Positions 1 through 42,218 of a stretch of 64,000 nt of DNA are shown here, in pieces. Numbering within the stretch: position 1 is the first letter of the stretch; the number at the start of each line of letters is the position of its first letter. The stretch comes from Octopus sinensis (lineage: Eukaryota): NCBI RefSeq assembly GCF_006345805.1, contig NC_043026.1:9610001-9674000 (forward strand), in the 5' to 3' direction. The notes beneath the pieces were generated by a model. It was not told the DNA's origin and ran no database searches. It saw only the letters and a program-made list of their open reading frames with translations. Made by a program: the position numbers and the translations under genes.

Positions 1-325
1 AACGAAAATAAAACAAAACACAAACAGTAGATAAAAAAAAAGATAGCAAATAAGGGAAGTAACTCCGAACGTTTGCTAATATTTGACGATTGTCTGTCCT
101 TGTATAAAGGCAAATGGGGGGAGGGGGGCGAAATAATTTTTTAAAAAGTTTTGAAGTAAAATAGGTTATTTATTTGCAGTTTGAAACAGTTTATTAAAAT
201 ATAACAACGAGAGAAAGAAAATAAAATACGAAAAAATTTAAAAAATTAAAAAAAAAATCTTTGCTTCTTGTGCGTGTGGTGTATGAAGGACGTGAGTTGA
301 TGTGTGTGTGTGTATATTTCAGTGG

Positions 326-586
326 TGGAGGCGCAATGGCCCAGTGGTTAGGGCAGCGGACTCGCGGTCATAGGATCGCGGTTTCGATTCCCAGACCGGG
401 CGTTGTGAGTGTTTATTGAGCGAAAACACCTAAAAGCTCCACGAGGCTCCGGCAGGGGATGGTGGTGATCCCTGCTGTACTCTTTCACCACAACTTTCTC
501 TCTCACTCTTACTTCCTGTTTCTGCTGTACCTGTATTTCAAGGATCAACCGGAACCCTCATCGTCGTAACCGACGGAGTGCTTCCA
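326..586 (+). mobile_element. tRNA-derived SINE, family C, internally deleted copy
   Basis: Pol III A box (TGGCCCAGTGGTT) and B box (GGTTTCGATTCC); 12-bp TSD ATATTTCAGTGG at 314-325 and 586-597; lacks the central segment present in the copies at 1900-2293 and 14739-15115. Confidence 0.85.
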
Positions 587-683
587 TATTTCAGTGGCCC
601 AGTAGGTAAAGGTGTTTAGAAGTAGTAATGTAATACAAGAGTGGAAGTTTCAAATCTCTGCCAAGGAACTTTTAGTAAAGAAA

Positions 684-714
<31 letters not shown>

Positions 715-933
715 TCGGGGTGAGTACTTGATAATTATAAGTACCTGTGTATACCGTTTGGTGGTGTAGGTGGTGGAGTAAATTGATCAAAATAAAAACA
801 TGATGCCAAGGATTCAGCGGTACATATGTTGTGCGCGGCTGAAGAAGGCCACAGACATACATTATGCATTGTTATAAATCTGTCTAATAAAGGCCCGAAA
901 CATATATATATAATATATATATATAAATACATA

Positions 934-1819
934 CAGGGAGGACCAAAATGATCTGACACATTTGGAGGCTTAATAAAAGCAATAAGAAATAATGAAAAGA
1001 AAAATTTTATTTTCTGAATGTACATATGATGCCATTTTATTTCATTAAGTTTTAAAAATTAAATCAGCTAAATGCCTCCCATCATTGTCAGCACACTGTT
1101 GGAGACGATCGTGAAAGTTATCGATAACTCTATGGATCATTTCTTCTGGAATGGTTGCTATTTCTACACAAATTACACATTTTATTCATCGATAGATCGA
1201 AGGCGATGACCGAATACTTTTGATTTTAAATATCCCCACAAGTAAAAATCACATTTCACCATTCCAGAAGAAGTGATCCAAAGAGTTATCGATAACTCTA
1301 TGGATCATTTCTTCTGGAATGGTTGCTATTTCTACACAAATTACACATTTTATTCATCGATAGATCGAAGGCGATGACCGAATACTTTTGATTTTAAATA
1401 TCCCCTCAAGAAGAAATCACATTTCACCATTCCAGAAGAAGTGATCCAAAGAGTTATCGATAACTCTATGGATCATTTCTTCTGGAATGGTTGCTATTTC
1501 TACACAAATTACACATTTTATTCATCGATAGATCGAAGGCGATGACCGAATACTTTTGATTTTAAATATCCCCTCAAGAAGAAATCACATTTCACCATTC
1601 CAGAAGAAGTGATCCATAGAGTTATCGATAACTTTCACGATCGTCTCCAACAGTGTGCTGACAATGATGGGAGGCATTTAGCTGATTTAATTTTTAAAAC
1701 TTAATGAAATAAAATGGCATTATATGTACATTCAGAAAATAAAATTTTTCTTTTCATTATTTCTTATTTTGAGCTTTTATTAAGCCCCCAAATGTGTCAG
1801 ATCGTTTTGGTCCACCCTG
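934..1819. mobile_element. Tc1/mariner-type foldback MITE with ~190-bp TIRs and three internal 168-bp tandem units
   Basis: TA|CAGGGAGGACCAAAA...TTTTGGTCCACCCTG|TA termini; arms 934-1128 and 1621-1819 are reverse complements; palindrome GTTATCGATAAC recurs at 1117, 1285, 1453 and 1621. Confidence 0.85.
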
Positions 1820-1899
1820 TATATAAACGGATACGCATACACATAAGTGTATGAACTCTAACAGATGCGAATATGTGCATACTAAATTTCATATATATA

Positions 1900-2293
1900 T
1901 GGAAGCACTCCGTCGGTTACGACGATGAGGGTTCCGGTTGATCCGAATCAACGGAACAGCCTGCTCGTGAAATTAACGTGTAAGTGGCCGAGTACTCCAC
2001 AGACACGTGCACCCTTAACGTAGTTCTCGGGGATATTCAGCGTGACACAGAGAGTGACAAGGCCGGCCCCTTGAAATGCAGGTACAACAGTAACAGGAAG
2101 TAAGAGAGAGAGAGAGAGAGAGTTGTGGTAAAAGAGTACAGCAGGGATCACCACTATCCCCTGCCGGGGGCCTCGTGGAGCTTTTTTTAGGTGTTTTCGC
2201 TCAATAAACACTCACAACGCCCGGTCTGGGAATCGAAACCGCGATCCTATCACCACGAGTCCGCTGCCCTAACCACTGGGCCATTGCGCCTCA
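1900..2293 (-). mobile_element. SINE family C, full-length
   Basis: Reverse complement of the family C head and 3' end (GTCGTAACCGACGGAGTGCTTCCA). Confidence 0.85.
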
Positions 2294-2776
2294 ACCACTG
2301 AAATATACACACACACACCACACACACACATCAACTCACATCCTTCATACACCCACACGCACAAGAAGCAAAGATCCTAAAGAAAATAAAATACGAAAAA
2401 ATTTAATAAAAAAAAAAAAATCTAAATTTCATACCGCGTTCATCAACGTATAAGATGCATTCACACTTAAGATGCATTCACGCTTAAGATGCACCCCAAC
2501 TTCATATTTTGTGGAAAAAATGAACAAATTGAATATTTCTTCTCAGTCACTCAGTATCTCATCTATAATATGGTCGCATTAGAATGCATGACATTTTTTT
2601 GTTTGTTTAGGTTTAAAGGTTATTGTGCCGGTATATACGATAGATATGCATGAATGCCCTTCTTTGTGCTGTTTTTCAATGCAGACGTTACCTGAGGCAG
2701 CCAAAACAATTGCAATAAATATATTTTAACATGATGTCCGAGTGGTGATTTATGCTCATCGAATTTCCAGATTGGG

Positions 2777-4018
2777 TTATGAACAGCCGTATCTTCGCTT
2801 TCTGGAGCGCGGGCAACAGGACTGTGGACTGCCGGACCTTTGCTTGCTGGACTGCGTGCAGTTAGACTTTTGCCTGCTAGACTTAGGGCACCGAAACCTT
2901 TGCTTGCTGGGCTGTGGGCAACCAGACCTTTCTTTGCTGGGCTGCGGGCTGCCAGACCTTTGCTTGCTGGGCTGCGGGCAGCCAGACCTTTCTTTGCTGG
3001 GCTGCGGGCAGCCAGACCTTTCTTTGCTGGGCTGTGGGCAGCCAGACCTTTCCTTGCTGGGTTGCGGGCAGCCAGATCTTTCCTGGTTGGGCTGCGGGCA
3101 GCCAGACCTTTGCTTGCTGGGCTGCGGACAGCCAGACCTTTCTTTGCTGGGCTGTGGGCAGACAGACCTTTCCTGGCTGGGCTGTGGGCAGACAGACCTT
3201 TCCTGGCTGGGTTGCGGGCAGCCAGACCTTTCCTGGCTGGGTTGCGGACAGCCAGACCTTTCCTGGCTGGGCTGCGGACAGCCAGACCTTTCTTTGCTGG
3301 GCTGCGGGCAGCCAGACCTTTCCTTGCCGGGCTGCGGGCGGCCAAACCGTTGAGGGCTGGTAAGTTGCTTGTAGGGCTTTGGTTGGCTGAAACTTTGCTT
3401 GCTGGACTGTGAACAGCGGAACAATGGACTATTGGATTGTAAACTATTAGACTGTGAACAACTGGAGCTCAAAAGGTCACAAGTCGAGCTGCTGGACCGC
3501 GAACGATCGAAATGTGAACCGTCGGTCGGCGAACCGTCGGTCAACGAACCGTCGGTCAACGAACCGTCGGTCAACGAACCGTCGGTCAACGAACCGTCGG
3601 TCAACGAACCGTCGGTCAACGAACCGTCGGTCAACGAAACGTCTGCCAACGAAACATCGGCCAATGAACCGTCGGTCAACGAACCATCGGTCAACGAACC
3701 ATCAGTCAACGAACCATCAGTCAACGAACCATCAGTCAACGAACCATCAGTCAACGAACCGTCGGACCACAAACTGCTATCAGATCTGCTGGAGCACAAA
3801 CTATTGGAAAGCAAGCTGTCGGATCTGCCGGCGCACGGAATATTGGACCACACACTGCCGGATCTCGAACTCTCGGGCTCTGGGCTGCTGGATCGCGAAC
3901 TTCCACTTGTGGACCACCAGTTTTCTTCGTAAGAACTGTATTCATATTCAACTTTGCTCTCCTCATAAAAGCTGGTCTCTGAGTTTCCGAATCCAAAAAA
4001 AGACAATAATATTTCCAT
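2777..4018 (-). CDS. 413-aa Ser-rich orphan protein with GSLTD pentapeptide and SGCPQPSKER decapeptide arrays; single coding exon
   Basis: Only frame open across both arrays and the spacer; strong start context ACCATGG; upstream acceptor TTTGTTTATTTCAG (exon starts 4207); most unit-to-unit substitutions are synonymous in this frame (CCG/CCA, TGC/TGT, CAG/CAA, AGG/AGA, GAC/GAT, ACC/ACT). Confidence 0.7.
   Translation of the reverse strand: MEILLSFFGFGNSETSFYEESKVEYEYSSYEENWWSTSGSSRSSSPEPESSRSGSVWSNIPCAGRSDSLLSNSLCSSRSDSSLWSDGSLTDGSLTDGSLTDGSLTDGSLTDGSLTDGSLADVSLADVSLTDGSLTDGSLTDGSLTDGSLTDGSLTDGSLTDGSPTDGSHFDRSRSSSSTCDLLSSSCSQSNSLQSNSPLFRCSQSSKQSFSQPKPYKQLTSPQRFGRPQPGKERSGCPQPSKERSGCPQPSQERSGCPQPSQERSGCPQPSQERSVCPQPSQERSVCPQPSKERSGCPQPSKQRSGCPQPNQERSGCPQPSKERSGCPQPSKERSGCPQPSKERSGCPQPSKQRSGSPQPSKERSGCPQPSKQRFRCPKSSRQKSNCTQSSKQRSGSPQSCCPRSRKRRYGCS
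2890..3345. repeat. 30-bp coding minisatellite, ~15 units
   Basis: GCTGCGGGCAGCCAGACCTTTCTTTGCTGG tandem units. Confidence 0.95.
3518..3768. repeat. 15-bp coding minisatellite, ~17 units
   Basis: GAACCGTCGGTCAAC tandem units. Confidence 0.95.
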
Positions 4019-4227
4019 GGTATGGTATCACGTCGTCACAACTGGTTTTAGAAATCTTAAATAAGGATTCACTTCGGTAGCACGCGGGTATAAAACTTTG
4101 ACGGTCTTTCAACAATCTCTTAAGTTGTATGGTTGGTCGATTTTCTTACGGTTATCCAAATTAAGCTGAGTATATTGAGGTAAAAAGAGCAGGGCTTTTC
4201 CAGTTATCTGAAATAAACAAATATATA

Positions 4228-4946
4228 TCTTTATATATAAAAGTCAAGTTGTGTGTACCTGGGCACTGTATACAATAATTTCATTATTATATTTATAAGC
4301 CATTTAAGAAACACAAAAACTGTTAGATTCACTTCATTTAAATTTAATTTGCATTATGGAATTTTGTCGGTGAACAGGTCGCAGTCCCAAAGCGACGAAA
4401 ATATTTTGGCAAATCTTTATATATAAAAGTGAAGTTGTATGTCTGTCTCCTACGATTTAGATTCCTAACTACTCCCACATTTTGCGGTGCAGTTTAACCA
4501 AAACCGGGTATCTTATAGTCGTGATTCATATCGAGCCCTTCTGGGTATTAGCGCGCGTCTACGATGAGTCTACGATTTTTTAAAAAATTTACCATAATTT
4601 TTTTCCATTTTAATGCATTTTTTTGCTATTATATAAGGAAAGTAACTCTCTAAAAATGTCTACGATGAGTCAACGATTTAAAAAAAAATTTTAGCGGTTC
4701 GGCAAAAGAGACCGATAGAATAAGTACTGGGCTTACAAAGAATAAGTCCCGGGGTCGATTTGCTCGACTAAAGGCGGTGCTCCAGCATGGCCGCAATCAA
4801 ATGACTGAAACAAGTAAAAGAGTAAAGAGTATCATTTTTTTCCATTTTTAATGCATTTTTTTGCTATTTTTTGGCTATAACTCTCTAAAAATGCTTATAT
4901 AGTTATTTCCCTTACAAACCCGAGCAACGCCGGGCGATACTGCTAG
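4228..4946 (+). mobile_element. Composite non-autonomous Helitron (core 4414-4946, extra 5' terminus at 4228), with a SINE A 3' fragment inserted at ~4692-4830
   Basis: 5' TCTTTATATATAAAAG (twice); subterminal hairpin CCCGAGCAACGCCGGG and 3' CTAG|T; no TSD; sister copies elsewhere in the window. Confidence 0.75.
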
Positions 4947-5092
4947 TATATATATAAATTGGGGGTTCAAAATTAGGGTTCTCAACTATATTTTGGATAT
5001 AGGCCCCAGCGATACCTATAATACTATATTCATAGCGATTCAACGTTTAAAAAAAATCCTATAGTATTTTTATAATAAAAAAAATAAGGAAT

Positions 5093-5370
5093 TTAGCTGC
5101 GTGGTAAGTAGCTTGCTTACCAACCGCAAGGTTCCGAATTTTAGTCCCACTGCGTGGCACCTTGGACAAGTGTCTTCTACTGTAGCCTCGGAATGACCAA
5201 AGCCTTGTGAATGGATTTGGTAGTCGGAAACCGAAAGAAGCCCGTCGTATATGTGTGTGTATGGCCCTAATATCGCTTGACAACTGATGTTGGTGTGTTT
5301 ACGTCCCCATGACGAAGTGGTTCGGCAAAAAGACATCGAGAGAATAAATACTAGGCTTACGAAGAATAAA
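5093..5370 (+). mobile_element. SINE family A, diverged
   Basis: GTGGTAAGTAGCTTGCTTACCAACC head and TGGCACCTTGGACAAGTGTCTTCT body. Confidence 0.7.
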
Positions 5371-5478
5371 TCCTACGAGCATTAGATTTCTTGGAAGAAG
5401 GATCGAATGTATACGAAACAGGGACAGAAAAACGGACGATGCCACACGAATATAAAATACAAAAAACAATAAAGGTAA

Positions 5479-5809
5479 AGACCCCCTTCGGTCATGAATG
5501 ACCATGGGATTGCACCTAGAAAGTTACCCTCCTAGACACAAGTCTGGGCAAGGTTGGTTTATGGAAGACCAGCAGTCGCCCATGCATACCAGCCTCCCCT
5601 CTCCACGTCACCGATGTTGTCCAAGGGAAAGACAAAGGCCGATACAGCTTGGCACCTGTGACGTCGCAACTCATTTCTACAGCTGAGTGAACTGGAGCAA
5701 CGTGAAATAAAGTGCCATGCTCAAGAACACAACACGCAGCCCGGTCCGGGATTCGAGCTCACGACCTCACGATCGTAAGCTCGACGCTCTTACCACTGAG
5801 CCATGCGCC
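5479..5809 (-). mobile_element. tRNA-derived SINE family E
   Basis: Head GCATGGCTCAGTGGTAAGAGCG...GAGCTCGAATCCCGG; near-identical plus-strand copy at 50046-50379. Confidence 0.85.
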
Positions 5810-6208
5810 TTCACAAAAAACAATAATGAGATACAAAAAACAAAAATGAAATACAAGAAGCAATAATGGTAAAAACAGGACGAAAACAGCGGGTGTCTTA
5901 CGACTAATAACAGTACAACAAGTTTAGCTGGCGTATTTTGGGAAAAATGCCTTTATCGGCAGACGAAGACAAGAGATGTTCTCACTATTTCTTTATTACC
6001 CACAAGGGGCGACGAAGAGGGGACATTACAAAACATTGGGGACATAGAACATTATTATTAAAATCATGAGCAATGAATTATTAAATGAAAAAATGATAAT
6101 ATGAAAAGCGATGCTAACGGCCCCATCCGCCAGCATCACTTACCTGTCCTTCATCACCCATTTCCCATTACAATTCCTTGCTTTTCTATCACACTCTTCG
6201 TTTTCCTT

Positions 6209-7501
6209 TCATACATCTCTTATCATTTCATCCTGCATTGGCGCTGTCATCCATTTTATACCCTCTTCCTCACACTTCCTCGCCAATATCTCCATAAGTT
6301 CATATTCCACAACCGCGTAACTACCATCTTCATGTTCGCGCCATAAGTCTTTATTTATCAACCTTTTCGAGTTCTGAGTGTCTTTTTTCCTCGCAACACA
6401 TAAAAAAATAGGTCCTGGGCCTTTGTTTGTTCTGTGTGCCTGCGCTTGTTTTTGTTTTTCTTGTAGGCGGGGAGCGGGTGGAATCGCTGTTTGCAGGGGA
6501 AGGATGGGACTCAGAGGGTGTGGGTGGTGTTGGGGTTTCGTACTGTTTTCTTTTTTCCTTCTTTTTCTCTTTTTTCTCCCTTCTTCCCACTCTTGCTGGA
6601 TCTCCTCCTCTTCAGTTGCTTCCCTTTCTGTTAGGTTCTCCTTTTCTTTAGTGTCTTCCTTCTTTTGGGGCTCCGTAACGACTTCCTTTTCCTTTGGTGG
6701 GGGAGGGCAGTAGGCTCTTATGTGACCCCTCAGGCCACACTTATAGCACCTGGGCGCCCTGCCCTCCACCCACACTCTCATAATAATGTTCCCAGTTCTT
6801 ATACTATCCGTCAGCCTTTCTATTACTTCCGTCTCCGTCTGTATGTTCATGTCCAAGGTGGCACCTCTCGCGCCTTCGTATTTCATAGTGGCGTGGAGGA
6901 TGTCCACCTTTTCTTCGTTTCCCTTAATCACCGCAGCCGTTATATATTCACCCTCTAGGTGTGGAGGTATTCCCTCCACCCTAATTCTTGTGGTCCTTCT
7001 ATTTAAATACGAGGGTAGCAAGTATATTTTCTCCGTCCTCACCACCTTGGCTGCTATATTCCTGGCAACGTTCTCGCTTCTATATTGCACCGTTACAGTT
7101 CCGTACTCCATTCCTCTTGTCAGGTAAACAATTTCCTCTCCCGCCTGTTTCAATGCCTCTTCAATAGCTTCCATATTGACTATTTCCATCTTTCTTCCTC
7201 CATTCACGTACACTCTATATTTGATGGTTCTACGATTGAACCACTCGTCCCGCTTTGCTGGAGGTGACAGCTCGACTTCGCCGTTCTCCTCCTCCTTCAT
7301 AAATTCCTGGAAGCCTGGTAATTTAGCCAGGTCCACCTCTTTTTCTATCGACTTCTTCGTTGTTCCTGCGTAGGTACTTCCCAGCTTCCTGTCCATTTTC
7401 TCCACCGCGCTTTCCAACTCCTCCTCAGATGTTGAAAATTCTGACAAACTTCCAAATAAATCCTTCTCGGCCATCTCATCCGTTTGGGAGAGGCGGCTCA
7501 T
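6209..7501 (-). CDS. LINE ORF1/gag-like nucleic-acid-binding protein with CX2CX4HX4C zinc knuckle
   Basis: CYKCGLRGHIRAYC knuckle preceded by RRM-like segments (GTVTVQY; RTTRIRVEGIP) and followed by an E/K-rich tract; likely start ATG 7501 (the annotated extension to 7537 lies in the CR1 insert). Confidence 0.8.
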   Translation of the reverse strand: MSRLSQTDEMAEKDLFGSLSEFSTSEEELESAVEKMDRKLGSTYAGTTKKSIEKEVDLAKLPGFQEFMKEEENGEVELSPPAKRDEWFNRRTIKYRVYVNGGRKMEIVNMEAIEEALKQAGEEIVYLTRGMEYGTVTVQYRSENVARNIAAKVVRTEKIYLLPSYLNRRTTRIRVEGIPPHLEGEYITAAVIKGNEEKVDILHATMKYEGARGATLDMNIQTETEVIERLTDSIRTGNIIMRVWVEGRAPRCYKCGLRGHIRAYCPPPPKEKEVVTEPQKKEDTKEKENLTEREATEEEEIQQEWEEGRKKRKRRKKENSTKPQHHPHPLSPILPLQTAIPPAPRLQEKQKQAQAHRTNKGPGPIFLCVARKKDTQNSKRLINKDLWREHEDGSYAVVEYELMEILARKCEEEGIKWMTAPMQDEMIRDV

Positions 7502-7504
7502 AAT

Positions 7505-8162
7505 TTGCGTTGATTTGCAGTGACTTGCGTTGGACAAAGCATATCTCTAAAATTGTCAAGAAGGCCGAGGGTGTCTTGGCATCACTCAGCAAGACTTTTG
7601 TTAGCCGCTCTCCAGCCATCTATTTAAAACTGTATACAGCTATGGTACGACCACACTTGGAATTCGCATCATCAGTTTGGAATCCCTATCTTGCTCAGAA
7701 CATTGACCTCCTGGAATCTGTCCAGAGACGTGCAACCAAACGCATACCCTCCATCAGACACCTACCATATTCTGAGCGCCTTGTTTCCCTGGGCATGGAT
7801 TCACTGAAGCTCCGGCGTCTGGCGACGGACTTGGTAAACACCCACACAAGTTATCAACCACCTCACCAACAACAACACTGAACACCTTTTTGATCTCCAT
7901 GTGTCTAACACACGTGGACATGCCTACAAAGTCAGAAAACAATACAGCTCCCATGACTTTCGGAAACATTTTTTCACGCTCAGAGTTGCTGAAGCGTGGA
8001 ATAAACTGCCTGCGTGAGTTGTTGACTGCCATGACACTGCATCTTTTAAGGCCCACATGCTTTCCGAAATCTGCCGAAACTACACCTGATTATATATACA
8101 CTTTAGATGAGTTGTAGTGCACCTGAGCACTGTACACAATTATTATTATTATTATTATTATT
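7505..8162 (+). mobile_element. 5'-truncated CR1-clade LINE (RT C-terminus and 3' tail), frameshifted
   Basis: LYTAMVRPHLEFASSVWNPY, ESVQRRATK, RGHAYKV, FFTLRVAEAWNKLP motifs; (ATT)n tail; frameshift near 7850; possible ATAAT TSD at 7500-7504 and 8163-8167. Confidence 0.9.
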
Positions 8163-8680
8163 ATAATCACCTCAGACCGAAAAACGGCCGCCCGAACAGA
8201 ACCAGCGCGACGCGAAACCGCACCAACCGACGTTCCAAACTCCACAACAACAACAATTCACTTTTTGTTCTTTTTTTTACCAATATATATATATATATAC
8301 ATACGAACGTGTGCCTAGGGAAAACTAGGTTTATAAAAGTATTTTTCGTTGAATTTATAATAAAATCCTTTAATTTTAGTGGGTTTAAAAGAACTAAATC
8401 TTGAAAGTAGGACCAATATTGAAATTACCTTCTTATTGTCTGCCCTAACAAGATACGCTATTTGCCATTCGTATTACAATACTCCCGTCACTGCAAGTTC
8501 ACCTCCACGAAAGACTGATCTTGCTGCCACAGCTAAAAACCCAATGCAGAAGTTTCTAGAATAAGGCTGAGGACATTTTTTAGTACCCGGAATGAATTGC
8601 AAGGGTGTACGGATAGAAATAAGGTAGTTTTGATTTTATAAATTTACTAAATTTCTTTGTCATAGTTTGACCTACTTTAA

Positions 8681-9265
8681 CCCCTTACCCAACAATTATT
8701 TTGAAAATAAATGTATTTTTTCAGACATATTTTTTAATTGTTTTATTTTACTATGTTTTGAATGGTGATTTCGAGGTATATTTCAAACCTTATTTATTAT
8801 GAATTTTAATTCAATAATATTGATTTTAAATTACCGCTCTGGGCAGAAACGAGTTAACCCGTTTTTTTCTAAAATCATATTACTTTTACAAAAAATCATG
8901 TTATTTTATTTGGTTATCGGCATGGTGGGGTTATAATATAAATGTATAAAAAAACAACGTAAAAACAAAGTGAAAACTTCTATTCATAAAATGTGCCTTC
9001 CAACCCTTCGACTATCTCCAGGTGACTAAATCATACTCGGTCTTCAATGCCTTTCTCAAGCGAAAGGTGGCAGAAATCGTCACTGCCAGACGTATAAAGT
9101 GAGCGAAATATACTCGTATATGTCAAAAAAGAGTTTATAATAGACGAAGGAACTCGTTTGCTGTCGATTTTGGCGAGTCTATCTTTTGACGAGTTAACTC
9201 GCCAGAGATAGAAAAAAAAACGATTTCGGTCAAAACGCATATATTCGTTTCTGCCGGGTAAGGGG
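8681..9265. mobile_element. piggyBac-type MITE
   Basis: TTAA|CCCCTTACCC...GGGTAAGGGG|TTAA: perfect 10-bp TIR with TTAA TSD. Confidence 0.75.
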
Positions 9266-9474
9266 TTAAGTGGAGCGTTTAAAAGCAGTCAGATTGTGAC
9301 TTACCCGTTTGTCAGACGAGATACAAGCGAAAAGAATTCCACGGCGTAACACCGATATTTATGGGTTTGTGAGTGTGTATGTACGTGGGTGTATCTATAT
9401 GTGTTGTGTGTTAATGAACGTGTGTGTTGTTGATTGTGTGTGTGTGTGTGGCCAGGTCGAGTTTATTGTATTAA

Positions 9475-10240
9475 GGCGGCGAGCTGGCAGAACCGTTAGC
9501 ATGCCGGGCGAAATGCGTAACCGTATTTCGTCTGCCGTTACGTCCTGAGTTCAAATTCCGCCGAGGTCGACTTTGCCTTTCATCCCTTCGGAGTCGATTA
9601 AATAAGTACCAGTTACGCACCGGGGTCGATATAATCGACTTAATCCGTTTGTCTGTTCTTGCTTGTCCCCTCTGTGTGTAGCCCCTTATGGGCAGTAAAG
9701 AAATAGGTATTTCGTCTGCCGTTACGTTCTGAGTTCAAACTCCGCCGAGGTCGACTTTGCCTTTTATCCTTTCGGGGTCGATAAATTGAGTACCAGTTAC
9801 GCACCGGGGTCGATATAATCGACCAAATCCGTTTGTCTGTTCTTGTTTGTCCCCTATGTATGTAGCCCCTTGTGGGCAGTAAAGAAATAGGTATTTCGTC
9901 TGCCGTTACGTTGTGAGTTCAAATTCGGCCGAGGTCGACTTTGCCTTTCATCCTTTCGGGGTCGATAAATTAAGTACCAGTTCCGCACTGGGGTCGATGT
10001 AATCGACTTAATACCTATGTCTGTCCTTGTTTGTCCCCTCTGTGCCCCTTGTGGGTAGTAAAGAAATAGGTATTTCGTCTTTCTTTACGTTCTGAGTTCA
10101 AATCCCGCCGGGGTCGAATTTACCTTTTATCTTTTCGGAGATCGATAAATTAAGTACCAGTTGCATAGTGGGGTCGGCCTAATCGACTGCCCCCCCCCCC
10201 CGGCTCCCACCAAATTTCAGACCTTGTGCCTAGGTTAGAA
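9475..10240 (+). mobile_element. SINE family B with ~4 tandem body units
   Basis: Single head GGCGGCGAGCTGGCAGAA followed by repeated GTATTTCGTCTGCCGTTACG...GTAAAGAAATAG units. Confidence 0.9.
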
Positions 10241-10244
10241 AAGA

Positions 10245-11030
10245 AACACTAGCACGCCGGTACGGTGAAACAGCCTGTCCAGATGAATAAACCTGAGGCC
10301 TAGAGTCGCCCCCAGGCCATCAGACTCTACCAACCCATTATATAAAATCCGTGTGGAACCCCCACCGCCGGCGTTGCCCGAGTGCCGGAATAGCAAGAAG
10401 GCCTTACGGCACTCTTTATGCCACTCACTCGACCTCGGTCTACGAGAACACCAGGCTTCCTGTTCGCAAAAACTTTTGAACTCGGGGAACATTTGTCTGG
10501 CCAGCGGAGACCACACCCGTTCACTATCCAGGAGAATCCAGAGGTGCCTCAACCTCAACGCACGGCTGCGCATCATTAACCAAGGCATCCCTAAACCTCC
10601 CTTTAAAGGCTTTTGACAGCAGACAGAGCGTTTCACAAGTGGCGACCTGCCCTTCCACAAAAAGCGAAAGAGCTGTCTCTCCAACCTGATCAACCACGAA
10701 TCCGGACAGGGCACGACGGTCAGGCGGTAGGTAACGACCGATGCGATAAACACATTGGCCACCTCCGCCCTCCCTTTCAGGGATAGCCACCGCCAAGACC
10801 AGGTCTTGACTACTGCAGCCACCCTGCACAATACCTCCGTCCAGTTCTTCTCTATCTGGAGGACTGGTCCAAACCAAACTCCCAGCAACTTAACCGGTCC
10901 CTCAGTCCAGCGTTCAACAACGCTGACTGAAGGCATCGACTTGCCAACCCAGGTGCCGAGCTGCAAGCCGACCGACTTTCCCCGGTTAATCTTTGCTCCT
11001 GCCACCCCCTCGTAAGTCTGAATAGTCTTA
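10245..11030 (-). mobile_element. Tx1/L1-clade LINE ORF2 fragment (post-RT region)
   Basis: GAKINRGKS, VKLLGVWFG, WSWRWLSLKGRAEVANVFIAS, FRFLWKG, KGGLGMP motifs typical of L1/Tx1 ORF2. Confidence 0.85.
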
Positions 11031-11204
11031 CCCACTTGGTCTTGTATTTTAGTAATTCTCTTATGCCAGTTGACGGCTGTCGCGTTCCACCACCAGCCGC
11101 TGACGCAAAACTTTTCCTTTCTTCAATTTGGAAGGTCCTTTCTTCTGTCTTTCTTTTGGTGTTCGTAACTTTTGGTAATGTGTGTGTGTGTGTGTGTGTG
11201 TGTA

Positions 11205-11358
11205 TGCGACGTGCTTCTTTCAGTTTCCGTCGACCAAATCCACTCACAAGGCTTTGGTCGGCCCGAGGCTATAGTAGAAGACACTTTGCCAAGGTGCCAC
11301 GCAGTTGGACTGAACCCGGAACCATGTAATTGGCAAGCAAGCTACTTACCACACACCA
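11205..11358 (-). mobile_element. SINE family A, 5' half
   Basis: Reverse complement of the family A head, next to (GT)n. Confidence 0.8.
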
Positions 11359-11419
11359 CTCGACAGAAGAATGTAAAGAATATTATAAGTAAAGAAGAAT
11401 GTCAAGATCGTAAATGGTG

Positions 11420-32657: not shown

Positions 32658-32742
<85 letters not shown>

Positions 32743-36818: not shown

Positions 36819-39800
36819 TTATTTGTCAAAATAAAAGAAAGCAAAAGATTGACGTCCAGGAATAATTCCAAAAACCATCAAAGAATTGTCTGAAACATCC
36901 AAACCAAGAACTTCAAAGACTTCATTATCATCCTCACTGAGGAGTAAATATTTTGGATTATCTTCAGATATCAGGATTTCATTATCTTCAGATGTTTCCT
37001 CTTCAATATGTCGAGGTATTTCGTAAATATTGTTCTTTAAATCTGTTATATAAACACATTCACCAATTATGGTCAGACGAGGTCTTGGAATATAATATTC
37101 CAGACCATAAAACATTCCTCCTATTCTTATCCTCCTCACCAAAGACTTTTCCCTGAACCATTCCACAAAACACAAAGCTTCGCATTGTCCAAAATCCTCC
37201 TTCTTCATCTCCCTCCCCAAAACAACAACATCACCAAAAGATGTGACTCCCACACCATCCACACCATCATCTCCCTCAAACCTTCCCCATCTCCTCATCT
37301 CCCCACGATACACTTCATCTTTACATTTCCCATCTTTGATATCAACCACATCCACATAATAAGGGTCTAAGATGTCAAGGTCTTTGCAAAAATAGTAATA
37401 CTTGTTGTTTCTCCATATTCTTTGGTATTTCTTGTGTCTCTCTTCTTGAGTTATGTCTCTAATATCATGACCACCACACACGAGTTGATTGTAGTTGTAT
37501 TTATAAATCCTGTTGTAGTATTTCTCAGTTCTGATGGTTTTTAAACGACAGAGATCCCCGTTGAAGACCTTCATTTCTCTCCCAAAGGCGACAATGAAAC
37601 ATTCCTCTGTCCACTGACATATGTCCAGTGGTGGTCGTTGTTGTTGTTCATATTGAAGTATGTCCACTGTTGTTGTTGTTGTTCTGATTAATGTGACACT
37701 TTCTCGAAACATCAACACACTCACATTCTCACCTAACTTTATTAGTTTACTGTTCCAATCCCTAATGTCCCCACAATCATAATCAACAAGTTCCTCAAAT
37801 GCAGGAATGGAAAAAGGGACCATTGCTGTCCTATATGGAAGTCTCCTCACTGATATTTCATCAGTTCCTGAATTATTAATCTCCGCTATGTAATTACTAC
37901 ATCTCACCTTTAATCTACCTTTACCAATTATTTCACCGGATTTACCTCTTCTTTTTCCTCCTCTATCTCCATCTCCTCCTCTGTATTCCAATTTATTAAT
38001 TAATTCATTACTGAATATTTCCTTGTTCGTTTCAGATGTAATGGAAGGGAAACGAAGACCAGAATCAAGATTTAATAACGACACAGATTCCAGAATGTTC
38101 ACTTGGTCCCCATCAATCTTTATGCAATGACATTCAATCAATTCAATATGTACACACCAGTAAATACCCCCCACTTTTCTCCATATTACACCATAAGGGA
38201 TGAGACTCGACCAAACTTGAGATGTCTGCAAATCTTCTCCATTCAGTTGAAATATTTCTTTCCTTTTAGGAACCGTGGCCATTATGTGTGATTCTTGTGT
38301 AAAACACACACCACCAACTAAACTTGCAACATTTCTGTGACATAGCAACTGGCCATCTTCATCGAATATTTTAACATTTCCATTATTGGCTTTTTCACAC
38401 ACAACTGTCTTTCCTTCCTCAGAGACATCAAAATCTTTTACTTGAACAAGACATTCGTCTGTTTGTAAACGAGCAACCGGGAAGCTGTCTCGATTCACCA
38501 TAAACAACCCTTCAACATACGATTCATTCTCTCTCCTCGTGGGGCTTCCAATAAACCTTGGTCCTTTACAGTCTATACTGGAGAAATCTACGTCATCTTT
38601 ATAAATTCTTTTATTTAAAAATATTCTCTTGTATTCCCCATTCTGGGTCAAACAAAAAATGTTTCGATATCCAGATAAACCAAAATATTTCTCCCAATGA
38701 CAAAAAATGTACAAAAAACTGTCATCAATTGTCATCCTGTCATCAACACCCCTAAAAAAATAATCATACAGCATATAGTGTCTGACTGAATGTAAATATT
38801 GACCACCACTGTTGAAGAAAATGATGAATCTCCAGTTGAAGACAATGATGACATTTTCATCTGTAACTTTAATATCCAGGATTCTATCAGAATAATTTCC
38901 ATCTTCTTTTCTCATTCTTAATGGTTCAGGTATGTATATTTGTTTTATTTCCTCCACACTCGAATGTATTTCATCAATATCAACAAAATACAAATGAACT
39001 CCATCTCTCCAATCACTAAAAACCAGTTGATTGTTTGATAAAGAAGCCACACAACCATAATAATTTCTCGTTTGGTAAATTACCAACGACAATGGAAACT
39101 CCACTTTTAATGTCAACAGTTGGAGTTTATTATAAAAATTCCTATTCATAATGACCAGTGTGTTTGACTGCCATCGACACATTTTAATATAAGGATTAAC
39201 ATTCGCTTTGATCGAATCCAAAAGCTGACCATCCAATGTGAATATCTTAATGTTTTTATTCTTCTCGTCACATCCTGCAATCAGATTATTTTCAGTAAGA
39301 ACCAAATGATTAATCCTCGCTGGTCCTTTGTCTCCCAAATGTTTAGGGACAGGAATATGTCTGGCTTTATCAGAAACTGTCAGGTCCTGTAGATATAAAG
39401 TGGAAGACAACATTTCACTGACAGAAATGTTTCTGGAAAATACATCCACCAGGTCGATGTAATAATTAAGTTGATTATTAGTAACGAGATCATTAACCAC
39501 CAAATTATGATCAGTTATAGCAAACATACGGCTTCCGTCTATCAGATAGACAAACGTTTGGTCAATAGATCCACCTTGGAGACTGAGGGGACGTTTCACT
39601 TGGGACATTAAAACACTGGGGACCATTTGACGACCGCCATGACCACCACCACCTATTGTAGTGTTGTACTGAAAAACTTTTTCCTTAGTAACAATTAATA
39701 GCTTTTCTGTTTTCTTGTCTATTGATAATGATTTCACAAAAACAGGGATATTAATTGTCTTAATTACTTCAACTTGATTATAATAAATGATGGCTAAAAT

Positions 39801-42218
39801 GTTTAAATGTGATGGTTTATCACAATAACAAACAATTTCACCTTCACCCATCTTACACACCTGGACATAAGGCTGCCTTAATGACACACTTCTCACTGTC
39901 TTTGACAGGTTTCCGATGACTCTTAATTGTTTCTGTAGGGGTAATGTGACACCTATATGATTAGAATCCCATCGACATATATCTGTGGCTGTAGATGGCA
40001 GAGATAATCTGGACACAATGTCTCCTTCCTGAGAAATGTATAACAAGCAATCATGGTTGATGTCGGACACCACTAGCTGTCCATTGGACAGATTACATAT
40101 TTCGCCAATGACAAGTTTTTGGTCATTTTCCTTTTCTTTGAGTCGTAGATTTAGATTTCTGATATAAGGATTTTTCATGTGTAAACAACAGCCAGACGAC
40201 TGGTCATGATTCTTGTAAAGAAGAACCCTGTTGAGTTGAGTGTCCGGGACATAAAGTGTTCCTTGGAAAACAGCAATGTGAGGGTGAACAGGGAAAGGCA
40301 GTTCCCACTGCCATTTCATTTCTCCATATAGATTGTAACATCTGAGAATAGATTGTCTCCTGAAGAGGACATAGAAATAAACATTATCAGAGTAGATGTG
40401 ATGAGGGTAGCCATATAATGGAAGGTGTTTTTGAAAAAGTTCTTCACCACATGTGGAATAAAATACCATTTTATTTTCGCTTCCATCTACGACTACAAAA
40501 TTAATTGGAGTTGCAGCAATGCTGACATTATAATGTCCCAGAGAAATTCTTTCTATAATGTCAACTTTATCATCCTTCATCAAGAGGATATGGACCTCGT
40601 GTTTGTTTCCATTTGTGGTTAGAGTTAAACACTTATTTGATACAACATGACATAGTTTAATGTAATCAGTATGGACTTTCATTAAAGGGCCTTTCATTAG
40701 CCCAGGGTATGTGATACACTGAAATTCTTTGTTTTCACGGTAAAACACCAGAAATCCTTTAGAATTCATTCTACAAAAGCAAGAAGGAATCTCAAGGAAA
40801 GTTGAATTATTTTGGTTAATTATTTCTCCAGTCTCAGTGAATAATATAGCTTTATTATTCCTGTAGAATATTAATATAGAAGATGTAGACATAGGTAGAA
40901 TATTAGTCATGTTGTAGCAATCCTCAATATAAATATAGTTGTTCAATGTTGGGGTCCATAGCTGGGGGTTATATGACTGCCTGGGCCAAAAGTCTTCATT
41001 TGTTCCAATGATATGAAGGACATCAAAATAATCGGTTACAAAAATGTTTTTTTTGCCAACAGAAATATGGCGGCATTTCATGCCAATTTCTCTTGTTGTC
41101 ACAGCACCCGTACCTGAAATCCGATAAATAATAGGTCCCTGGAGGACATAAAAATGGTTTTGGTACACAGTGATGTGGCTTGGAATGTCCAGGGAATTGG
41201 TATCCACCTCAAATAACTGCTGGCCATCTACATTGTAACAGGTAACCCTGTTAATACTGGGAAAGGATACTAAGAGTTTATTTTGTGCTCCTACAGCAAT
41301 ATCTGTTGGTGTTTCTTTGGTTATGAATTTGTATTTTATTCTATTCTCTTCCCAGTCAATGATGTATATGGTCCGACCAAACATTTCTACACCTATAAGC
41401 GTAGAATGTTCCAAATAAGAAACTAAGATTAATCCTAGCTGAATTCTTTTGATTTTAAAACTTAATGGGTTGATAATAAGAATCATTTTTTTGAAGGGGA
41501 GGGTGGCCAGGACTGTATCTTCACTGATTCTGGTAAAATCAGTAACAGAAGATGAGCAATGAACTTCATTTCTGTTGCCGTCTCTTGTTACACAACATAT
41601 TGTCATACAGTGGCGGGAATATGTTACAATACCCCCTTGTATGACAACAATATTGGATATTGGGTTGCTTAAGTCTTCACCAGATTCCTTGATCTTTGCT
41701 TCTCTGGTCACAACTGGTCGAAGAGGCCGAAATTTTGTGGTTACTTTTGGTGGTTCAATGGTCTTGTGGTTGTATGGGTTACAAGTGACATAAATGTCAA
41801 AGAGTCTTTGTTGAAACCAATCAAGGTTTTGGTGAACAAAATCATTATTTGGTTTTGCAGATTCCAGAAATCTTGGCATTTTACGTTTGACATTATTTAA
41901 AATTCGAGATCCATTTAAACCCAGAGAGTCCATGTGATTACATTTATCCTTTACATAATCTATAAATGTATTGATGTGGTCTGTTTTGATTAGTGTTCGG
42001 TAACATGTCACAATATGAAGGAAACTTGGTAACATGGACTTTTCCTGTTCCTCAGATTTCTTTGTGTCTTTTCTTTCCTGTTCTTCTGTTTTCTTTGTGT
42101 TTTGTGTATGTAATATTTGGGGAAGAATTGGTGTAGTTTCCTTATAAATTGGTGTTGTATCACAGACTGTGGCAGGAACGAGAGCCAACATTTTGTTTTC
42201 TTCATTAATCTTCTCCAT
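36819..42218 (-). CDS. 1799-aa intronless protein: short N-terminal region plus six tandem NHL-like beta-propeller modules
   Basis: 5400-bp uninterrupted ORF in very AT-rich DNA; AAAATGG start with in-frame stop at 42234-42236; acceptor TTGTATTTCAG (exon starts 42335); AATAAA overlaps the stop; recurring blade motifs about every 235-290 aa (DICRWDSNHIGVTLP, DICQWTEECFIVAF, GVCFTQESHIMATVP, DFTRISEDTVLATLP). Confidence 0.9.
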   Translation of the reverse strand: MEKINEENKMLALVPATVCDTTPIYKETTPILPQILHTQNTKKTEEQERKDTKKSEEQEKSMLPSFLHIVTCYRTLIKTDHINTFIDYVKDKCNHMDSLGLNGSRILNNVKRKMPRFLESAKPNNDFVHQNLDWFQQRLFDIYVTCNPYNHKTIEPPKVTTKFRPLRPVVTREAKIKESGEDLSNPISNIVVIQGGIVTYSRHCMTICCVTRDGNRNEVHCSSSVTDFTRISEDTVLATLPFKKMILIINPLSFKIKRIQLGLILVSYLEHSTLIGVEMFGRTIYIIDWEENRIKYKFITKETPTDIAVGAQNKLLVSFPSINRVTCYNVDGQQLFEVDTNSLDIPSHITVYQNHFYVLQGPIIYRISGTGAVTTREIGMKCRHISVGKKNIFVTDYFDVLHIIGTNEDFWPRQSYNPQLWTPTLNNYIYIEDCYNMTNILPMSTSSILIFYRNNKAILFTETGEIINQNNSTFLEIPSCFCRMNSKGFLVFYRENKEFQCITYPGLMKGPLMKVHTDYIKLCHVVSNKCLTLTTNGNKHEVHILLMKDDKVDIIERISLGHYNVSIAATPINFVVVDGSENKMVFYSTCGEELFQKHLPLYGYPHHIYSDNVYFYVLFRRQSILRCYNLYGEMKWQWELPFPVHPHIAVFQGTLYVPDTQLNRVLLYKNHDQSSGCCLHMKNPYIRNLNLRLKEKENDQKLVIGEICNLSNGQLVVSDINHDCLLYISQEGDIVSRLSLPSTATDICRWDSNHIGVTLPLQKQLRVIGNLSKTVRSVSLRQPYVQVCKMGEGEIVCYCDKPSHLNILAIIYYNQVEVIKTINIPVFVKSLSIDKKTEKLLIVTKEKVFQYNTTIGGGGHGGRQMVPSVLMSQVKRPLSLQGGSIDQTFVYLIDGSRMFAITDHNLVVNDLVTNNQLNYYIDLVDVFSRNISVSEMLSSTLYLQDLTVSDKARHIPVPKHLGDKGPARINHLVLTENNLIAGCDEKNKNIKIFTLDGQLLDSIKANVNPYIKMCRWQSNTLVIMNRNFYNKLQLLTLKVEFPLSLVIYQTRNYYGCVASLSNNQLVFSDWRDGVHLYFVDIDEIHSSVEEIKQIYIPEPLRMRKEDGNYSDRILDIKVTDENVIIVFNWRFIIFFNSGGQYLHSVRHYMLYDYFFRGVDDRMTIDDSFLYIFCHWEKYFGLSGYRNIFCLTQNGEYKRIFLNKRIYKDDVDFSSIDCKGPRFIGSPTRRENESYVEGLFMVNRDSFPVARLQTDECLVQVKDFDVSEEGKTVVCEKANNGNVKIFDEDGQLLCHRNVASLVGGVCFTQESHIMATVPKRKEIFQLNGEDLQTSQVWSSLIPYGVIWRKVGGIYWCVHIELIECHCIKIDGDQVNILESVSLLNLDSGLRFPSITSETNKEIFSNELINKLEYRGGDGDRGGKRRGKSGEIIGKGRLKVRCSNYIAEINNSGTDEISVRRLPYRTAMVPFSIPAFEELVDYDCGDIRDWNSKLIKLGENVSVLMFRESVTLIRTTTTTVDILQYEQQQRPPLDICQWTEECFIVAFGREMKVFNGDLCRLKTIRTEKYYNRIYKYNYNQLVCGGHDIRDITQEERHKKYQRIWRNNKYYYFCKDLDILDPYYVDVVDIKDGKCKDEVYRGEMRRWGRFEGDDGVDGVGVTSFGDVVVLGREMKKEDFGQCEALCFVEWFREKSLVRRIRIGGMFYGLEYYIPRPRLTIIGECVYITDLKNNIYEIPRHIEEETSEDNEILISEDNPKYLLLSEDDNEVFEVLGLDVSDNSLMVFGIIPGRQSFAFFYFDK

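What the first reader, a model, noticed from the sequence alone, without database searches (positions are those of the whole stretch)
2777..4207. Orphan 413-aa protein with two repeat blocks under apparent purifying selection: (GSLTD)17 and (SGCPQPSKER)~15
Seen: a single exon with acceptor and strong Kozak context. Variable positions among repeat units fall mostly on third codon positions of this frame. The protein has an acidic/aromatic N-terminus (YEESKVEYEYSSYEENWW), an acidic pentapeptide block, a basic Cys/Pro/Gln/Lys block and an RKRR tail. Knowledge: Cys-Pro-Gln/Lys repeats typify cross-linked structural proteins (vertebrate SPRR-type transglutaminase substrates), and 5-residue periodicity with central Leu typifies beta-solenoids. 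Inference: a possibly undescribed cephalopod structural or nuclear protein with bipolar charge.
Basis: partly seen in the sequence, partly recalled or inferred. Interest (0 to 1): 0.7.

Follow-up and report, generated by a model that had tools for sequence, protein, structure and literature searches.

The report
Unannotated octopus repeat ORF, coding unproven
An intact 413-codon reading frame built almost entirely from two in-phase DNA minisatellites sits in a transposon-rich part of an Octopus sinensis chromosome; it may be a young octopus-only gene for a floppy, serine-rich protein, but nothing available here shows it is expressed or conserved, and the claimed signs of selection and of a solenoid fold do not hold up.

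Summary
The ORF and both repeat blocks are real. The ORF is at 2777..4018 on the minus strand and has 413 codons. It holds a 15-nt array of about 17 copies (GSLTD) and a 30-nt array of about 17 copies (RSGCPQPSKE). The window is Octopus sinensis CM016888.1:9,610,001-9,674,000.

For a gene:
- It is the only frame open through all non-array segments.
- Its single in-frame ATG lies four codons after the last stop, in an ACCATGG context.
- A 265-nt ATG-free leader precedes it.
- Neither array has an indel.

Against a gene:
- No protein from this locus or any orthologue exists in a 5.8-billion-cluster database that does hold the O. sinensis, O. vulgaris and O. bimaculoides proteomes.
- The arrays are open in three to five or more of six frames anyway.
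- GC3 is 0.62, against 0.33 in the neighbouring gene.
- There is no AATAAA within 370 nt of the stop.

The third-position bias is not significant when counted by distinct variants (10 of 19). It drops to 6 of 15 once CpG transitions are removed.

AlphaFold predicts disorder, not a solenoid. Pfam finds neither a pentapeptide-repeat nor a cornifin/SPRR family match.

Best reading, at about 0.45: a young, lineage-restricted repeat-expansion gene or proto-gene encoding a disordered, charge-bipolar protein. The main rival, at about 0.4: a non-coding compound minisatellite with a fortuitous ORF.

The parts
2777..4018 (-). Intact 413-codon ORF (ATG 4016-4018, TAA 2777-2779); predicted 44.2-kDa product, 25% Ser, one Met
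3516..3765 (-). 15-nt minisatellite, about 17 units, GGTTCGTTGACCGAC = GSLTD; acidic block; CpG observed/expected 2.0
2831..3348 (-). 30-nt minisatellite, about 17 units, AGGTCTGGCTGCCCGCAGCCCAGCAAGGAA = RSGCPQPSKE; basic Cys/Pro/Gln block; open in at least five of the six frames
3766..3910 (-). Older, decayed 15-nt units (SVWSN, SLLSN, SLCSS, SLWSD type; AGY TTR nnn TCC RAY) upstream of the GSLTD array
3349..3515 (-). Linker between the arrays, also made of decayed Ser-rich 5-codon units (CSQSN, SLQSN, CSQSS); the only segment where the sense frame alone is free of stops
3911..4018 (-). Non-repeat N-terminus: short hydrophobic stretch ILLSFFGFG (aa 3-11) followed by the acidic/aromatic YEESKVEYEYSSYEENWW
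2792..2809 (-). RSRKRR basic cluster (aa 404-409) in the C-terminal tail; could be a nuclear localisation signal or a dibasic convertase site (inference)
4019..4283 (-). 265-nt leader without any ATG; in-frame TGA at 4030, four codons before the start; Kozak-type ACCATGG
4207..4239 (-). TATATATAAAG (TATA-like, 4227-4239) followed by tttgtttatttcag (acceptor-like, AG ending at 4207). This is either a TATA box about 30 nt before a transcription start or a 3' splice site. TATATAA occurs 0.5 times per kb in this window, so the signal is weak.

Best explanation
The locus is a compound, in-phase minisatellite that forms one intact ATG-initiated ORF on the minus strand of Octopus sinensis chromosome CM016888.1 (9,612,777-9,614,018).

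Most likely it is a young, octopus-lineage-restricted and so far unannotated gene or proto-gene. It would have grown by successive expansions of 15-nt and 30-nt units inside an older array of Ser-rich 5-codon units.

The whole coding sequence is in one exon. It would be served either by a TATA-like element about 30 nt upstream of position 4207 or by a 5'-UTR intron ending there.

The product would be a 44-kDa, 25% serine, intrinsically disordered polyampholyte. Its acidic half is (GSLTD)17, pI 4.05. Its basic half is (RSGCPQPSKE) about 15 times, pI 10.0, with one Cys, two Pro and a mean of about one Gln and 0.6 Lys per ten residues.

If translated it would act as a flexible, multivalent chain that other molecules or copies of itself bind by charge, and that can be fixed covalently through its regularly spaced cysteines and possibly Gln-Lys isopeptide bonds. 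That means a matrix, coat or gamete structural component rather than a folded enzyme or solenoid.

Shown: the ORF, the repeats, the composition, the lack of homologues, and the predicted disorder. Inferred: transcription, translation, cross-linking and tissue.
For: - The sense frame is the only one of six without a stop across all non-array segments. The linker has 0 stops in the sense frame and 1-4 in the other five frames.
- Dinucleotide shuffles keep the three non-array segments open with P = 0.0084, 0.17 and 0.24.
- The only in-frame ATG of the 413 codons sits four codons after the last upstream stop, in ACCATGG.
- No ATG occurs in any frame for 265 nt upstream. Only 1.7% of ATG-to-ATG gaps on this strand of the window are that long.
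- The antisense frames over the arrays have no ATG start.
- Both arrays have periods that are multiples of 3 and not a single indel in 768 nt, at 86-93% unit identity. Of the eight other arrays in the window at 86% identity or less, five carry 6-11% indels and the three without any are 193 nt or shorter.
- Both serine codon families are three- to five-fold enriched in this frame of the non-array segments: TCN 30 and AGY 27, against 11.2 and 5.5 expected, and 3/12 and 6/1 in the other two sense frames.
- Synonymous variants are 11 of 19 distinct variants.
- No 14-mer of the locus recurs elsewhere in the window, so it is not a dispersed repeat.
Against: - No protein from this locus and no orthologue is present in a database that demonstrably contains RefSeq O. 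sinensis, O. vulgaris and O. bimaculoides proteins. None of three annotation efforts called it.
- The arrays are open in three (15-nt) and at least five (30-nt) of six frames. The N-terminal and C-terminal segments are each open in three of six frames. The shuffle probabilities therefore overstate the surprise. A decayed in-phase repeat would give such an ORF at perhaps 1-6% per locus (my estimate).
- The third-position bias is not significant by distinct variants and is largely CpG decay.
- GC3 is 0.62, against 0.33 for the neighbouring 1799-aa gene.
- There is no AATAAA or ATTAAA within 370 nt after the stop.
- The neighbourhood is transposon debris.
- Another frame of the same DNA reads as an equally protein-like histone-H1-type repeat, scoring 39.9 bits on Pfam HC2. 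Protein-likeness is therefore cheap here.
Confidence: 0.45

Rival explanations
1. A non-coding compound minisatellite. Two GC-rich arrays whose unit lengths happen to be multiples of three expanded inside an older decayed array. Because the units contain no stop in several frames, one frame stays open by chance across the short non-array pieces and happens to begin with an ATG. Nothing is translated.
For: - It is not annotated in three Octopus proteomes, and no homologue exists anywhere.
- The arrays are open in three to five or more of six frames, and the N- and C-terminal segments in three of six.
- A (CA)n microsatellite in the same window produces 170-211-aa 'ORFs'.
- The variant pattern is explained by CpG decay plus unit duplication.
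- GC3 is atypical for the genome.
- There is no canonical poly(A) signal nearby.
- The setting is transposon-rich.
- An octopus genome of about 2.8 Gb that is about 66% repeats (PMC13282606) offers many trials.
Against: - The ATG lies exactly at the head of the open frame, with ACCATGG and a 265-nt ATG-free leader. I estimate roughly 1% jointly by chance.
- The linker is open only in the sense frame.
- There are zero indels in both arrays.
- Two adjacent arrays both have 3n periods.
- Both Ser codon families are enriched in one frame only.
Confidence: 0.4
2. A transcribed but differently read locus. It could be the last exon of a longer unannotated gene whose upstream exons lie beyond 4207, a long non-coding RNA, or a recently dead pseudogene of a repeat protein.
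For: An acceptor-like tttgtttatttcag ends at 4207. The RefSeq model of the neighbouring gene shows that annotation in this region is imperfect.
Against: In-frame stops lie between 4207 and the ATG, the nearest at 4030. An upstream exon could therefore add only untranslated sequence. No called gene is known within reach, and no protein in the database shares the N-terminus.
Confidence: 0.1
3. A folded protein of a known class: the GSLTD array forms a pentapeptide-repeat beta-solenoid and the Cys/Pro/Gln array is a true SPRR/cornifin homologue.
For: The GSLTD array aligns in register (G = i-2, S = i-1, L = i) with solved pentapeptide-repeat solenoids, at E = 2.6e-8 to 9e-3 against PDB sequences. 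The C-P-Q-P-x-K motif resembles SPRR units in composition (my knowledge).
Against: - Pfam Pentapeptide_4 scores 14.6 bits against a cut-off of 38, and PF00805 gives no hit.
- AlphaFold2 finds no strand, with pLDDT 31-40 within the whole protein and 54 for the block alone.
- Gly at every inward-facing i-2 position is atypical (knowledge).
- The in-frame block 2 matches no Pfam family at E <= 10.
- SPRR genes are an amniote family (knowledge).
Confidence: 0.03

Closest known systems
Involucrin and SPRR/cornifin cornified-envelope precursors (amniote epidermal differentiation complex)
   Same: These are short tandem peptide units (10 residues in involucrin, 8-9 in SPRR) rich in Pro, Gln, Lys and, in SPRR, Cys. 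They were built by successive in-frame minisatellite expansions. The whole coding sequence lies in one exon, preceded by an intron in the 5' UTR. The products are disordered and work as cross-linked structural material. All of this is from my knowledge of the families, not tested here.
   Different: There is no sequence homology: no Pfam family matches at E <= 10. The period and motif differ. There are no Gln/Lys-rich head and tail domains; instead there is an acidic GSLTD half. It is a mollusc, not an amniote. Cross-linking is untested.
Pentapeptide-repeat proteins (Rfr-type right-handed quadrilateral beta-helix; Pfam PF00805/PF13599; e.g. Np275/Np276 2J8K, designed 'beta1' 4YC5/5DRA)
   Same: It has a strict 5-residue period with Leu at the centre and a small residue at i-2, over 17 consecutive units. 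phmmer aligns it in register with solved solenoids.
   Different: Gly replaces Ala at i-2 and Ser replaces Asp/Asn at i-1 in nearly every unit. It scores far below the Pfam cut-off. AlphaFold2 predicts no structure. The block is embedded in a Ser-rich disordered protein.
Cys/Pro-repeat sperm-tail and mitochondrial-capsule proteins (Drosophila Mst84D/Mst87F family, mammalian SMCP)
   Same: These are small, fast-evolving, lineage-restricted genes with regularly spaced Cys-Pro repeats that are disulfide cross-linked, and they are often missed by annotation. This is from memory and is a lead only.
   Different: The motifs differ (Cys-Gly-Pro in Mst87F). No expression data exist here, no homology was found, and an acidic pentapeptide half is not a feature of those proteins.
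Coding minisatellites / VNTR exons in general (mucins and other low-complexity repeat proteins)
   Same: The unit lengths are multiples of three, the arrays show a gradient of unit subtypes, older decayed units flank younger homogeneous ones, and the encoded polypeptide is disordered and Ser-rich.
   Different: There are no Thr/Pro-rich mucin units, no flanking folded domains, no clear signal peptide (the short hydrophobic stretch has Glu at position 2), and no evidence of expression.

Membership tests
Pentapeptide-repeat proteins (PF00805 clan) | At least 8 tandem pentapeptides fitting A(D/N)LXX, with Leu/Phe at i and Ala/Cys/Ser/Thr at i-2 | tested here: inconclusive
   There are 17 tandem units with Leu at i in 15 of the 17, but Gly (or Val) at i-2 and Ser at i-1. 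They align in register with solved family members at E = 2.6e-8 to 9e-3.
Pentapeptide-repeat proteins (PF00805 clan) | Score at or above the Pfam gathering threshold | tested here: not met
   The whole protein matches no family at E <= 1. The block alone scores 14.6 bits on PF13599 against a cut-off of 38, and PF00805 gives no hit.
Pentapeptide-repeat proteins (PF00805 clan) | Right-handed quadrilateral beta-helix fold | tested here: not met
   Single-sequence AlphaFold2 gives pLDDT 31-40 over the block within the whole protein and 54 for the block alone (pTM 0.13), with no DSSP strand. Single-sequence prediction is a weak test.
SPRR / cornifin (PF02389) and involucrin | Sequence match to the family profile | tested here: not met
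   The in-frame Cys/Pro/Gln block (window 2780-3349, minus strand) matches no Pfam family at E <= 10. The whole protein matches none at E <= 1.
SPRR / cornifin (PF02389) and involucrin | Gln/Lys-rich head and tail domains flanking a Pro-rich repeat core of 8-9 residues (SPRR) | tested here: not met
   The period is 10 residues. The N-terminal part is acidic/aromatic plus the GSLTD array. The tail is RSRKRRYGCS.
SPRR / cornifin (PF02389) and involucrin | Substrate of transglutaminase; incorporated into a cross-linked envelope | not testable with these tools
   This needs biochemistry.
Bona fide protein-coding gene | Intact ATG-to-stop frame with a start context and leader compatible with scanning | tested here: met
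Bona fide protein-coding gene | Excess of synonymous over non-synonymous change | tested here: inconclusive
   Of 19 distinct variants, 11 are synonymous and 8 non-synonymous; 10 fall on position 3 (P = 0.065), and 6 of 15 without CpG transitions. The antisense frame scores the same.
Bona fide protein-coding gene | Conserved open frame in related species | not testable with these tools
   There is no annotated orthologue in O. vulgaris or O. bimaculoides. Their genomic DNA at this locus could not be reached.
Bona fide protein-coding gene | Transcript and peptide evidence | not testable with these tools
   No RNA-seq or proteome data are available here. The motifs are absent from the searchable literature.

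The most novel reading that the evidence does not exclude
A gene born within the Octopus lineage by in-frame minisatellite expansion. It would encode a disordered acidic-basic diblock protein whose regularly spaced Cys, Gln and Lys residues make it a cross-linkable structural component of a cephalopod-specific material, such as a gamete coat, spermatophore, sucker lining or skin. That would be an invertebrate, independently evolved counterpart of involucrin/SPRR-type envelope proteins.
Probability: 0.15. Interest if true: 0.55.

Novelty: new member of a known kind. Interest (0 to 1): 0.3.

Why it matters
If the ORF is expressed, it would be a clean example of a gene assembled from minisatellites in a cephalopod. 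It would also be a candidate component of a cephalopod-specific biomaterial, and a case that three genome annotations missed, probably because repeat masking hides about 60% of it.

If it is not expressed, it is a useful caution. In repeat DNA with 3n periods, long ORFs, third-position variation and protein-like motifs all arise without selection. Here another frame of the same DNA even scores on a histone-H1-like Pfam family.

Tried and rejected
1. Word-indexed homology search with the whole protein found nothing. An exact look-up of the protein also found nothing.
2. An exhaustive HMMER search of 1.84 billion representatives gave 2,756 hits. Every hit among the 25 of the best 150 that I read was an unrelated penta- or decapeptide repeat such as GQFTD, ANLTD, DGALP or EPSGIPDISG, and none of the 150 covered aa 1-32. 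I rejected them as homologues.
3. I tried to reach the orthologous DNA in O. vulgaris by synteny. The neighbouring 442-aa gag-like ORF is not on record and has no database relative at E <= 1e-20. The only annotated neighbour (LOC115226813) is 31 kb away, beyond the 10-kb flank limit. I abandoned this route.
4. A metagenome contig scan with aa 1-96 found no relative.
5. A look-up of the C-terminal 71-aa suffix, the piece a k=31 assembly should leave as a unique contig, found nothing on record.
6. A literature search for the repeat motifs gave 0 papers. The octopus repeat-annotation paper PMC13282606 says nothing about this array.
7. Rfam found no RNA family in 1-12000.
8. My first Pfam scan of block 2 used an out-of-frame reference (2780-3348). 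It returned HC2/Extensin/GLTT hits for the (AARSPAKKGL)n frame. I repeated it in frame and got no hit. I keep the slip as a control showing how easily these repeats look protein-like.
9. I considered TCN/AGY serine codon swaps at homologous repeat positions as proof of protein-level selection. In the proper register the SLxSN units are homologous at the DNA level (AGY TTR nnn TCC RAY), so the argument fails.
Full report
**1. What is there**

On the minus strand, an ORF runs from ATG 4018 to TAA 2777 and has 413 codons. Tandem Repeats Finder reports two arrays inside it:
- Period 15 nt, 16.7 copies, 93% matches, 0% indels, at 3516-3765.
- Period 30 nt, 17.3 copies, 86% matches, 0% indels, at 2831-3348.

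The repeat finder shows start-to-start spacings of exactly 15 and exactly 30 throughout.

In the ORF frame the units read GSLTD (12 exact, 5 variants) and RSGCPQPS[KQ][EQ] (about 14 core units plus degenerate edge units).

The description of the sequence is therefore correct.

**2. Where it comes from**

The large ORF at 36819..42218 has a 100%-identical RefSeq relative in Octopus sinensis (LOC115226813). Its contig is GCA_006345805.1 CM016888.1. The window equals CM016888.1:9,610,001-9,674,000, at 100% identity over the 26.8 kb that could be compared. The ORF under study is CM016888.1:9,612,777-9,614,018, minus strand.

The surroundings are transposon debris:
- a foldback-like element at about 278-2353;
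- SINE-like arrays;
- LINE reverse-transcriptase fragments;
- a gag-like ORF at 6209-7537.

No 14-mer of the ORF recurs elsewhere in the window. No Rfam family lies in 1-12000.

**3. Is it an orphan?**

Yes, as far as can be seen.
- The word-indexed search of 5.8 billion protein clusters found nothing at E <= 0.001, and the exact protein is not on record.
- That database does contain the O. sinensis, O. vulgaris and O. bimaculoides proteomes. The ORF is therefore not annotated in its own genome, and no orthologue is annotated in two relatives.
- The exhaustive HMMER search gave many 'hits' (best E = 6e-45). On inspection the 25 that I read are unrelated periodic low-complexity proteins such as GQFTD, ANLTD, DGALP, EPSGIPDISG and ETCPSDSREA. 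None of the 150 listed covers residues 1-32.
- Pfam finds nothing for the whole protein.
- The motifs occur in no searchable paper.

**4. Is it under purifying selection?**

This is not shown.
- Counting every difference from the unit consensus gives 13 synonymous to 5 non-synonymous in block 1 and 17 to 12 in block 2, with 29 of 47 differences at codon position 3. These counts repeat a few mutations that were copied along with their units.
- Counting distinct variants, 10 of 19 are at position 3 (P = 0.065 for one pre-chosen phase).
- Four of those ten are CpG transitions, which are mutational hot spots regardless of coding. They include three of the four in block 1, both common ones among them. 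Without them, 6 of 15 variants are at position 3, against one third expected.

**5. Evidence that it could still be a gene**

- (a) Across the non-array segments the sense frame is the only frame with no stop anywhere. In the 53-codon linker the other five frames have 1-4 stops. Dinucleotide shuffles keep the three segments open with P = 0.0084, 0.17 and 0.24.
- (b) The protein has a single Met. Its codon lies four codons after the last in-frame stop (TGA at 4030) and in ACCATGG. For a chance open frame I estimate that an ATG in the first four codons has a probability of about 0.07, from the local ATG frequency of 0.017.
- (c) No ATG occurs in any frame for 265 nt upstream. Only 1.7% of ATG-to-ATG gaps on this strand are that long.
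- (d) The antisense ORFs over the arrays start with GTG or TTG and have no ATG. If anything is translated, it is the minus strand.
- (e) Neither array has an indel. Of the eight other arrays in the window at 86% unit identity or less, five carry 6-11% indels and the three without any are 193 nt or shorter.
- (f) In the 178 non-array codons, both serine codon families are enriched in this frame only: TCN 30 and AGY 27, against 11.2 and 5.5 expected.

**6. Evidence against**

- The arrays are open in three (15-nt) and at least five (30-nt) of six frames. The N- and C-terminal segments are each open in three of six frames. These segments are themselves decayed 15-nt units of the type AGY TTR nnn TCC RAY. 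A composition-only shuffle therefore overstates the surprise. Using the other frames as an empirical null, I estimate a 1-6% chance per locus of one frame staying open throughout.
- The octopus genome is about 2.8 Gb and about 66% repeats (PMC13282606), so it offers many such loci.
- GC3 is 0.62, against 0.33 in the neighbouring gene.
- The nearest canonical poly(A) signal is an ATTAAA 372 nt downstream, inside a neighbouring element's A-rich tail.
- Three annotation efforts did not call the ORF. Tandem-repeat masking of about 60% of the ORF could explain that.
- As an accidental control, the +1 frame of the 30-nt array reads (AARSPAKKGL)n and scores 39.9 bits on Pfam HC2, a histone-H1-like family with a cut-off of 40. 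The (CA)n tract at 32616-33129 yields 172-211-aa 'ORFs'. In this kind of DNA, protein-like readings are cheap.

**7. What the product would be like**

It would be 44.2 kDa with GRAVY -1.15. The composition is Ser 25%, Pro 10%, Gly 9% and Gln 8%, with 23 Cys. Residues 1-170 have pI 4.05 and residues 171-413 have pI 10.0.

AlphaFold2 without an alignment gives mean pLDDT 40.5, pTM 0.14 and no secondary structure. The GSLTD block alone gives pLDDT 54, pTM 0.13 and no strands.

phmmer against PDB sequences aligns the GSLTD array in register with pentapeptide-repeat solenoids:
- designed 'beta1' proteins 5DRA and 4YC5, at E = 2.6e-8 and 1.7e-7;
- Np275/Np276 (2J8K), at E = 4e-4.

In that register G sits at i-2, S at i-1 and L at i. 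However, Pfam Pentapeptide_4 reaches only 14.6 bits against a cut-off of 38. Gly at every inward-facing i-2 position is atypical of the fold (knowledge). The in-frame decapeptide block matches no Pfam family at E <= 10.

The solenoid and SPRR readings are therefore analogies of periodicity and composition, not memberships.

The N-terminal ILLSFFGFG is a 9-residue hydrophobic stretch preceded by Met-Glu. That makes it a poor but not impossible signal peptide. RSRKRR could be a nuclear localisation signal or a dibasic processing site. Neither can be decided here.

**8. Best explanation and rivals**

- About 0.45: a young, lineage-restricted, unannotated gene or proto-gene grown by in-frame minisatellite expansion. 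It would encode a disordered acidic-basic diblock chain that would work by multivalent charge interactions and covalent fixation through its regularly spaced Cys (and possibly Gln-Lys bonds). The nearest functional analogues are involucrin/SPRR-type envelope precursors and Cys/Pro-repeat gamete structural proteins (knowledge, untested).
- About 0.40: a non-coding compound minisatellite with a fortuitous ORF.
- About 0.10: a differently read transcript, such as a terminal exon with a 5'-UTR intron, a long non-coding RNA or a pseudogene.
- About 0.03: a folded solenoid or a true SPRR homologue.

**9. What could not be done**

I could not reach the orthologous DNA of other cephalopods, nor any RNA or peptide data.
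- The synteny walk failed because the nearest annotated gene is 31 kb away, and the adjacent gag-like ORF is neither on record nor represented in the database.
- A metagenome scan and a suffix look-up designed around k=31 assembly break points were negative.

The decisive tests are therefore stranded or long-read RNA mapping to the stated coordinates, and inspection of the syntenic locus in O. vulgaris, O. bimaculoides and more distant octopods.

**10. Verdict**

The feature is real and the observation largely accurate. The selection claim is unsupported, the structural analogies fail membership tests, and the coding status is undecided. Interest is modest (0.3). If it proves to be a gene, it is a new member of a known kind: lineage-specific, minisatellite-built, low-complexity proteins.

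Noticed in passing
window 36819-42218 (-); RefSeq model spans 35389-42218: A continuous 1799-aa intronless ORF belongs to a large octopus-only family. The search returned 40 database relatives, all from O. vulgaris, O. sinensis or O. bimaculoides, at 42-100% identity; many sit on one 29-Mb O. vulgaris contig. It has no Pfam domain apart from a weak WDR90 beta-propeller hit (E = 0.0011). The RefSeq model LOC115226813 gives only 1377 aa, covers 68% of the ORF at 100% identity and runs 1.4 kb past the ORF's stop. The annotated introns therefore probably cut up a single long exon.
   Followed up: partly
window 2620-3345 (-), frame +1 relative to the studied ORF: The same 30-nt array read one base out of frame gives (AARSPA[KR]KGL)n. 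This SPKK-like, histone-H1/protamine-like repeat scores 39.9 bits on Pfam HC2 (cut-off 40). It has no ATG. I treated it as a low-complexity artefact, though it resembles mollusc sperm nuclear basic proteins in composition.
   Followed up: partly
window 214-2420: A foldback-like element has long inverted arms: 302-435 vs 2185-2318 (98%), 278-312 vs 2319-2353, and 981-1155 vs 1594-1768 (99%). It holds an internal 168-nt tandem repeat (1116-1633). It is flanked by 42-nt direct repeats (214-255 and 2379-2420, 93%). It ends about 360 nt downstream of the studied ORF's stop.
   Followed up: no
window 6209-7537 (-): A 442-aa ORF carries a CCHC zinc knuckle (CYKCGLRGHIRAYC) and a Lys/Glu-rich tail, so it looks gag-like or LINE-ORF1-like. 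It has no Pfam hit at E <= 0.01 and no relative at E <= 1e-20 in the 5.8-billion-cluster database.
   Followed up: partly
window 9523-10074, 12981-13584, 23498-24848, 30664-32330: Arrays of 146-184-nt units share the core GTTCTGAGTTCAAATTCCGCCGAGGTCGACTTTGCCTTTCATCC. It is probably a tRNA-derived SINE arranged in tandem, in both orientations.
   Followed up: no
window 59364-59780: An 84-nt-period array (5 copies, 80% matches) has a reverse complement that encodes C2H2 zinc-finger units with the TGEKPY linker. It is a zinc-finger gene or fragment on the minus strand.
   Followed up: no
window 32541-33176: A degenerate (CA)n microsatellite of about 260 units produces three overlapping 172-211-aa Cys/Val/Tyr/Met 'ORFs', two of them starting with ATG. 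It is a local example of spurious long ORFs in repeat DNA.
   Followed up: no
window 4227-4256 and 4413-4442: A 30-nt sequence containing the TATA-like motif upstream of the ORF (ATCTTTATATATAAAAGTSAAGTTGT) occurs twice, 186 nt apart, at 93% identity. The putative promoter region may itself be a local duplication or part of a repeat.
   Followed up: no
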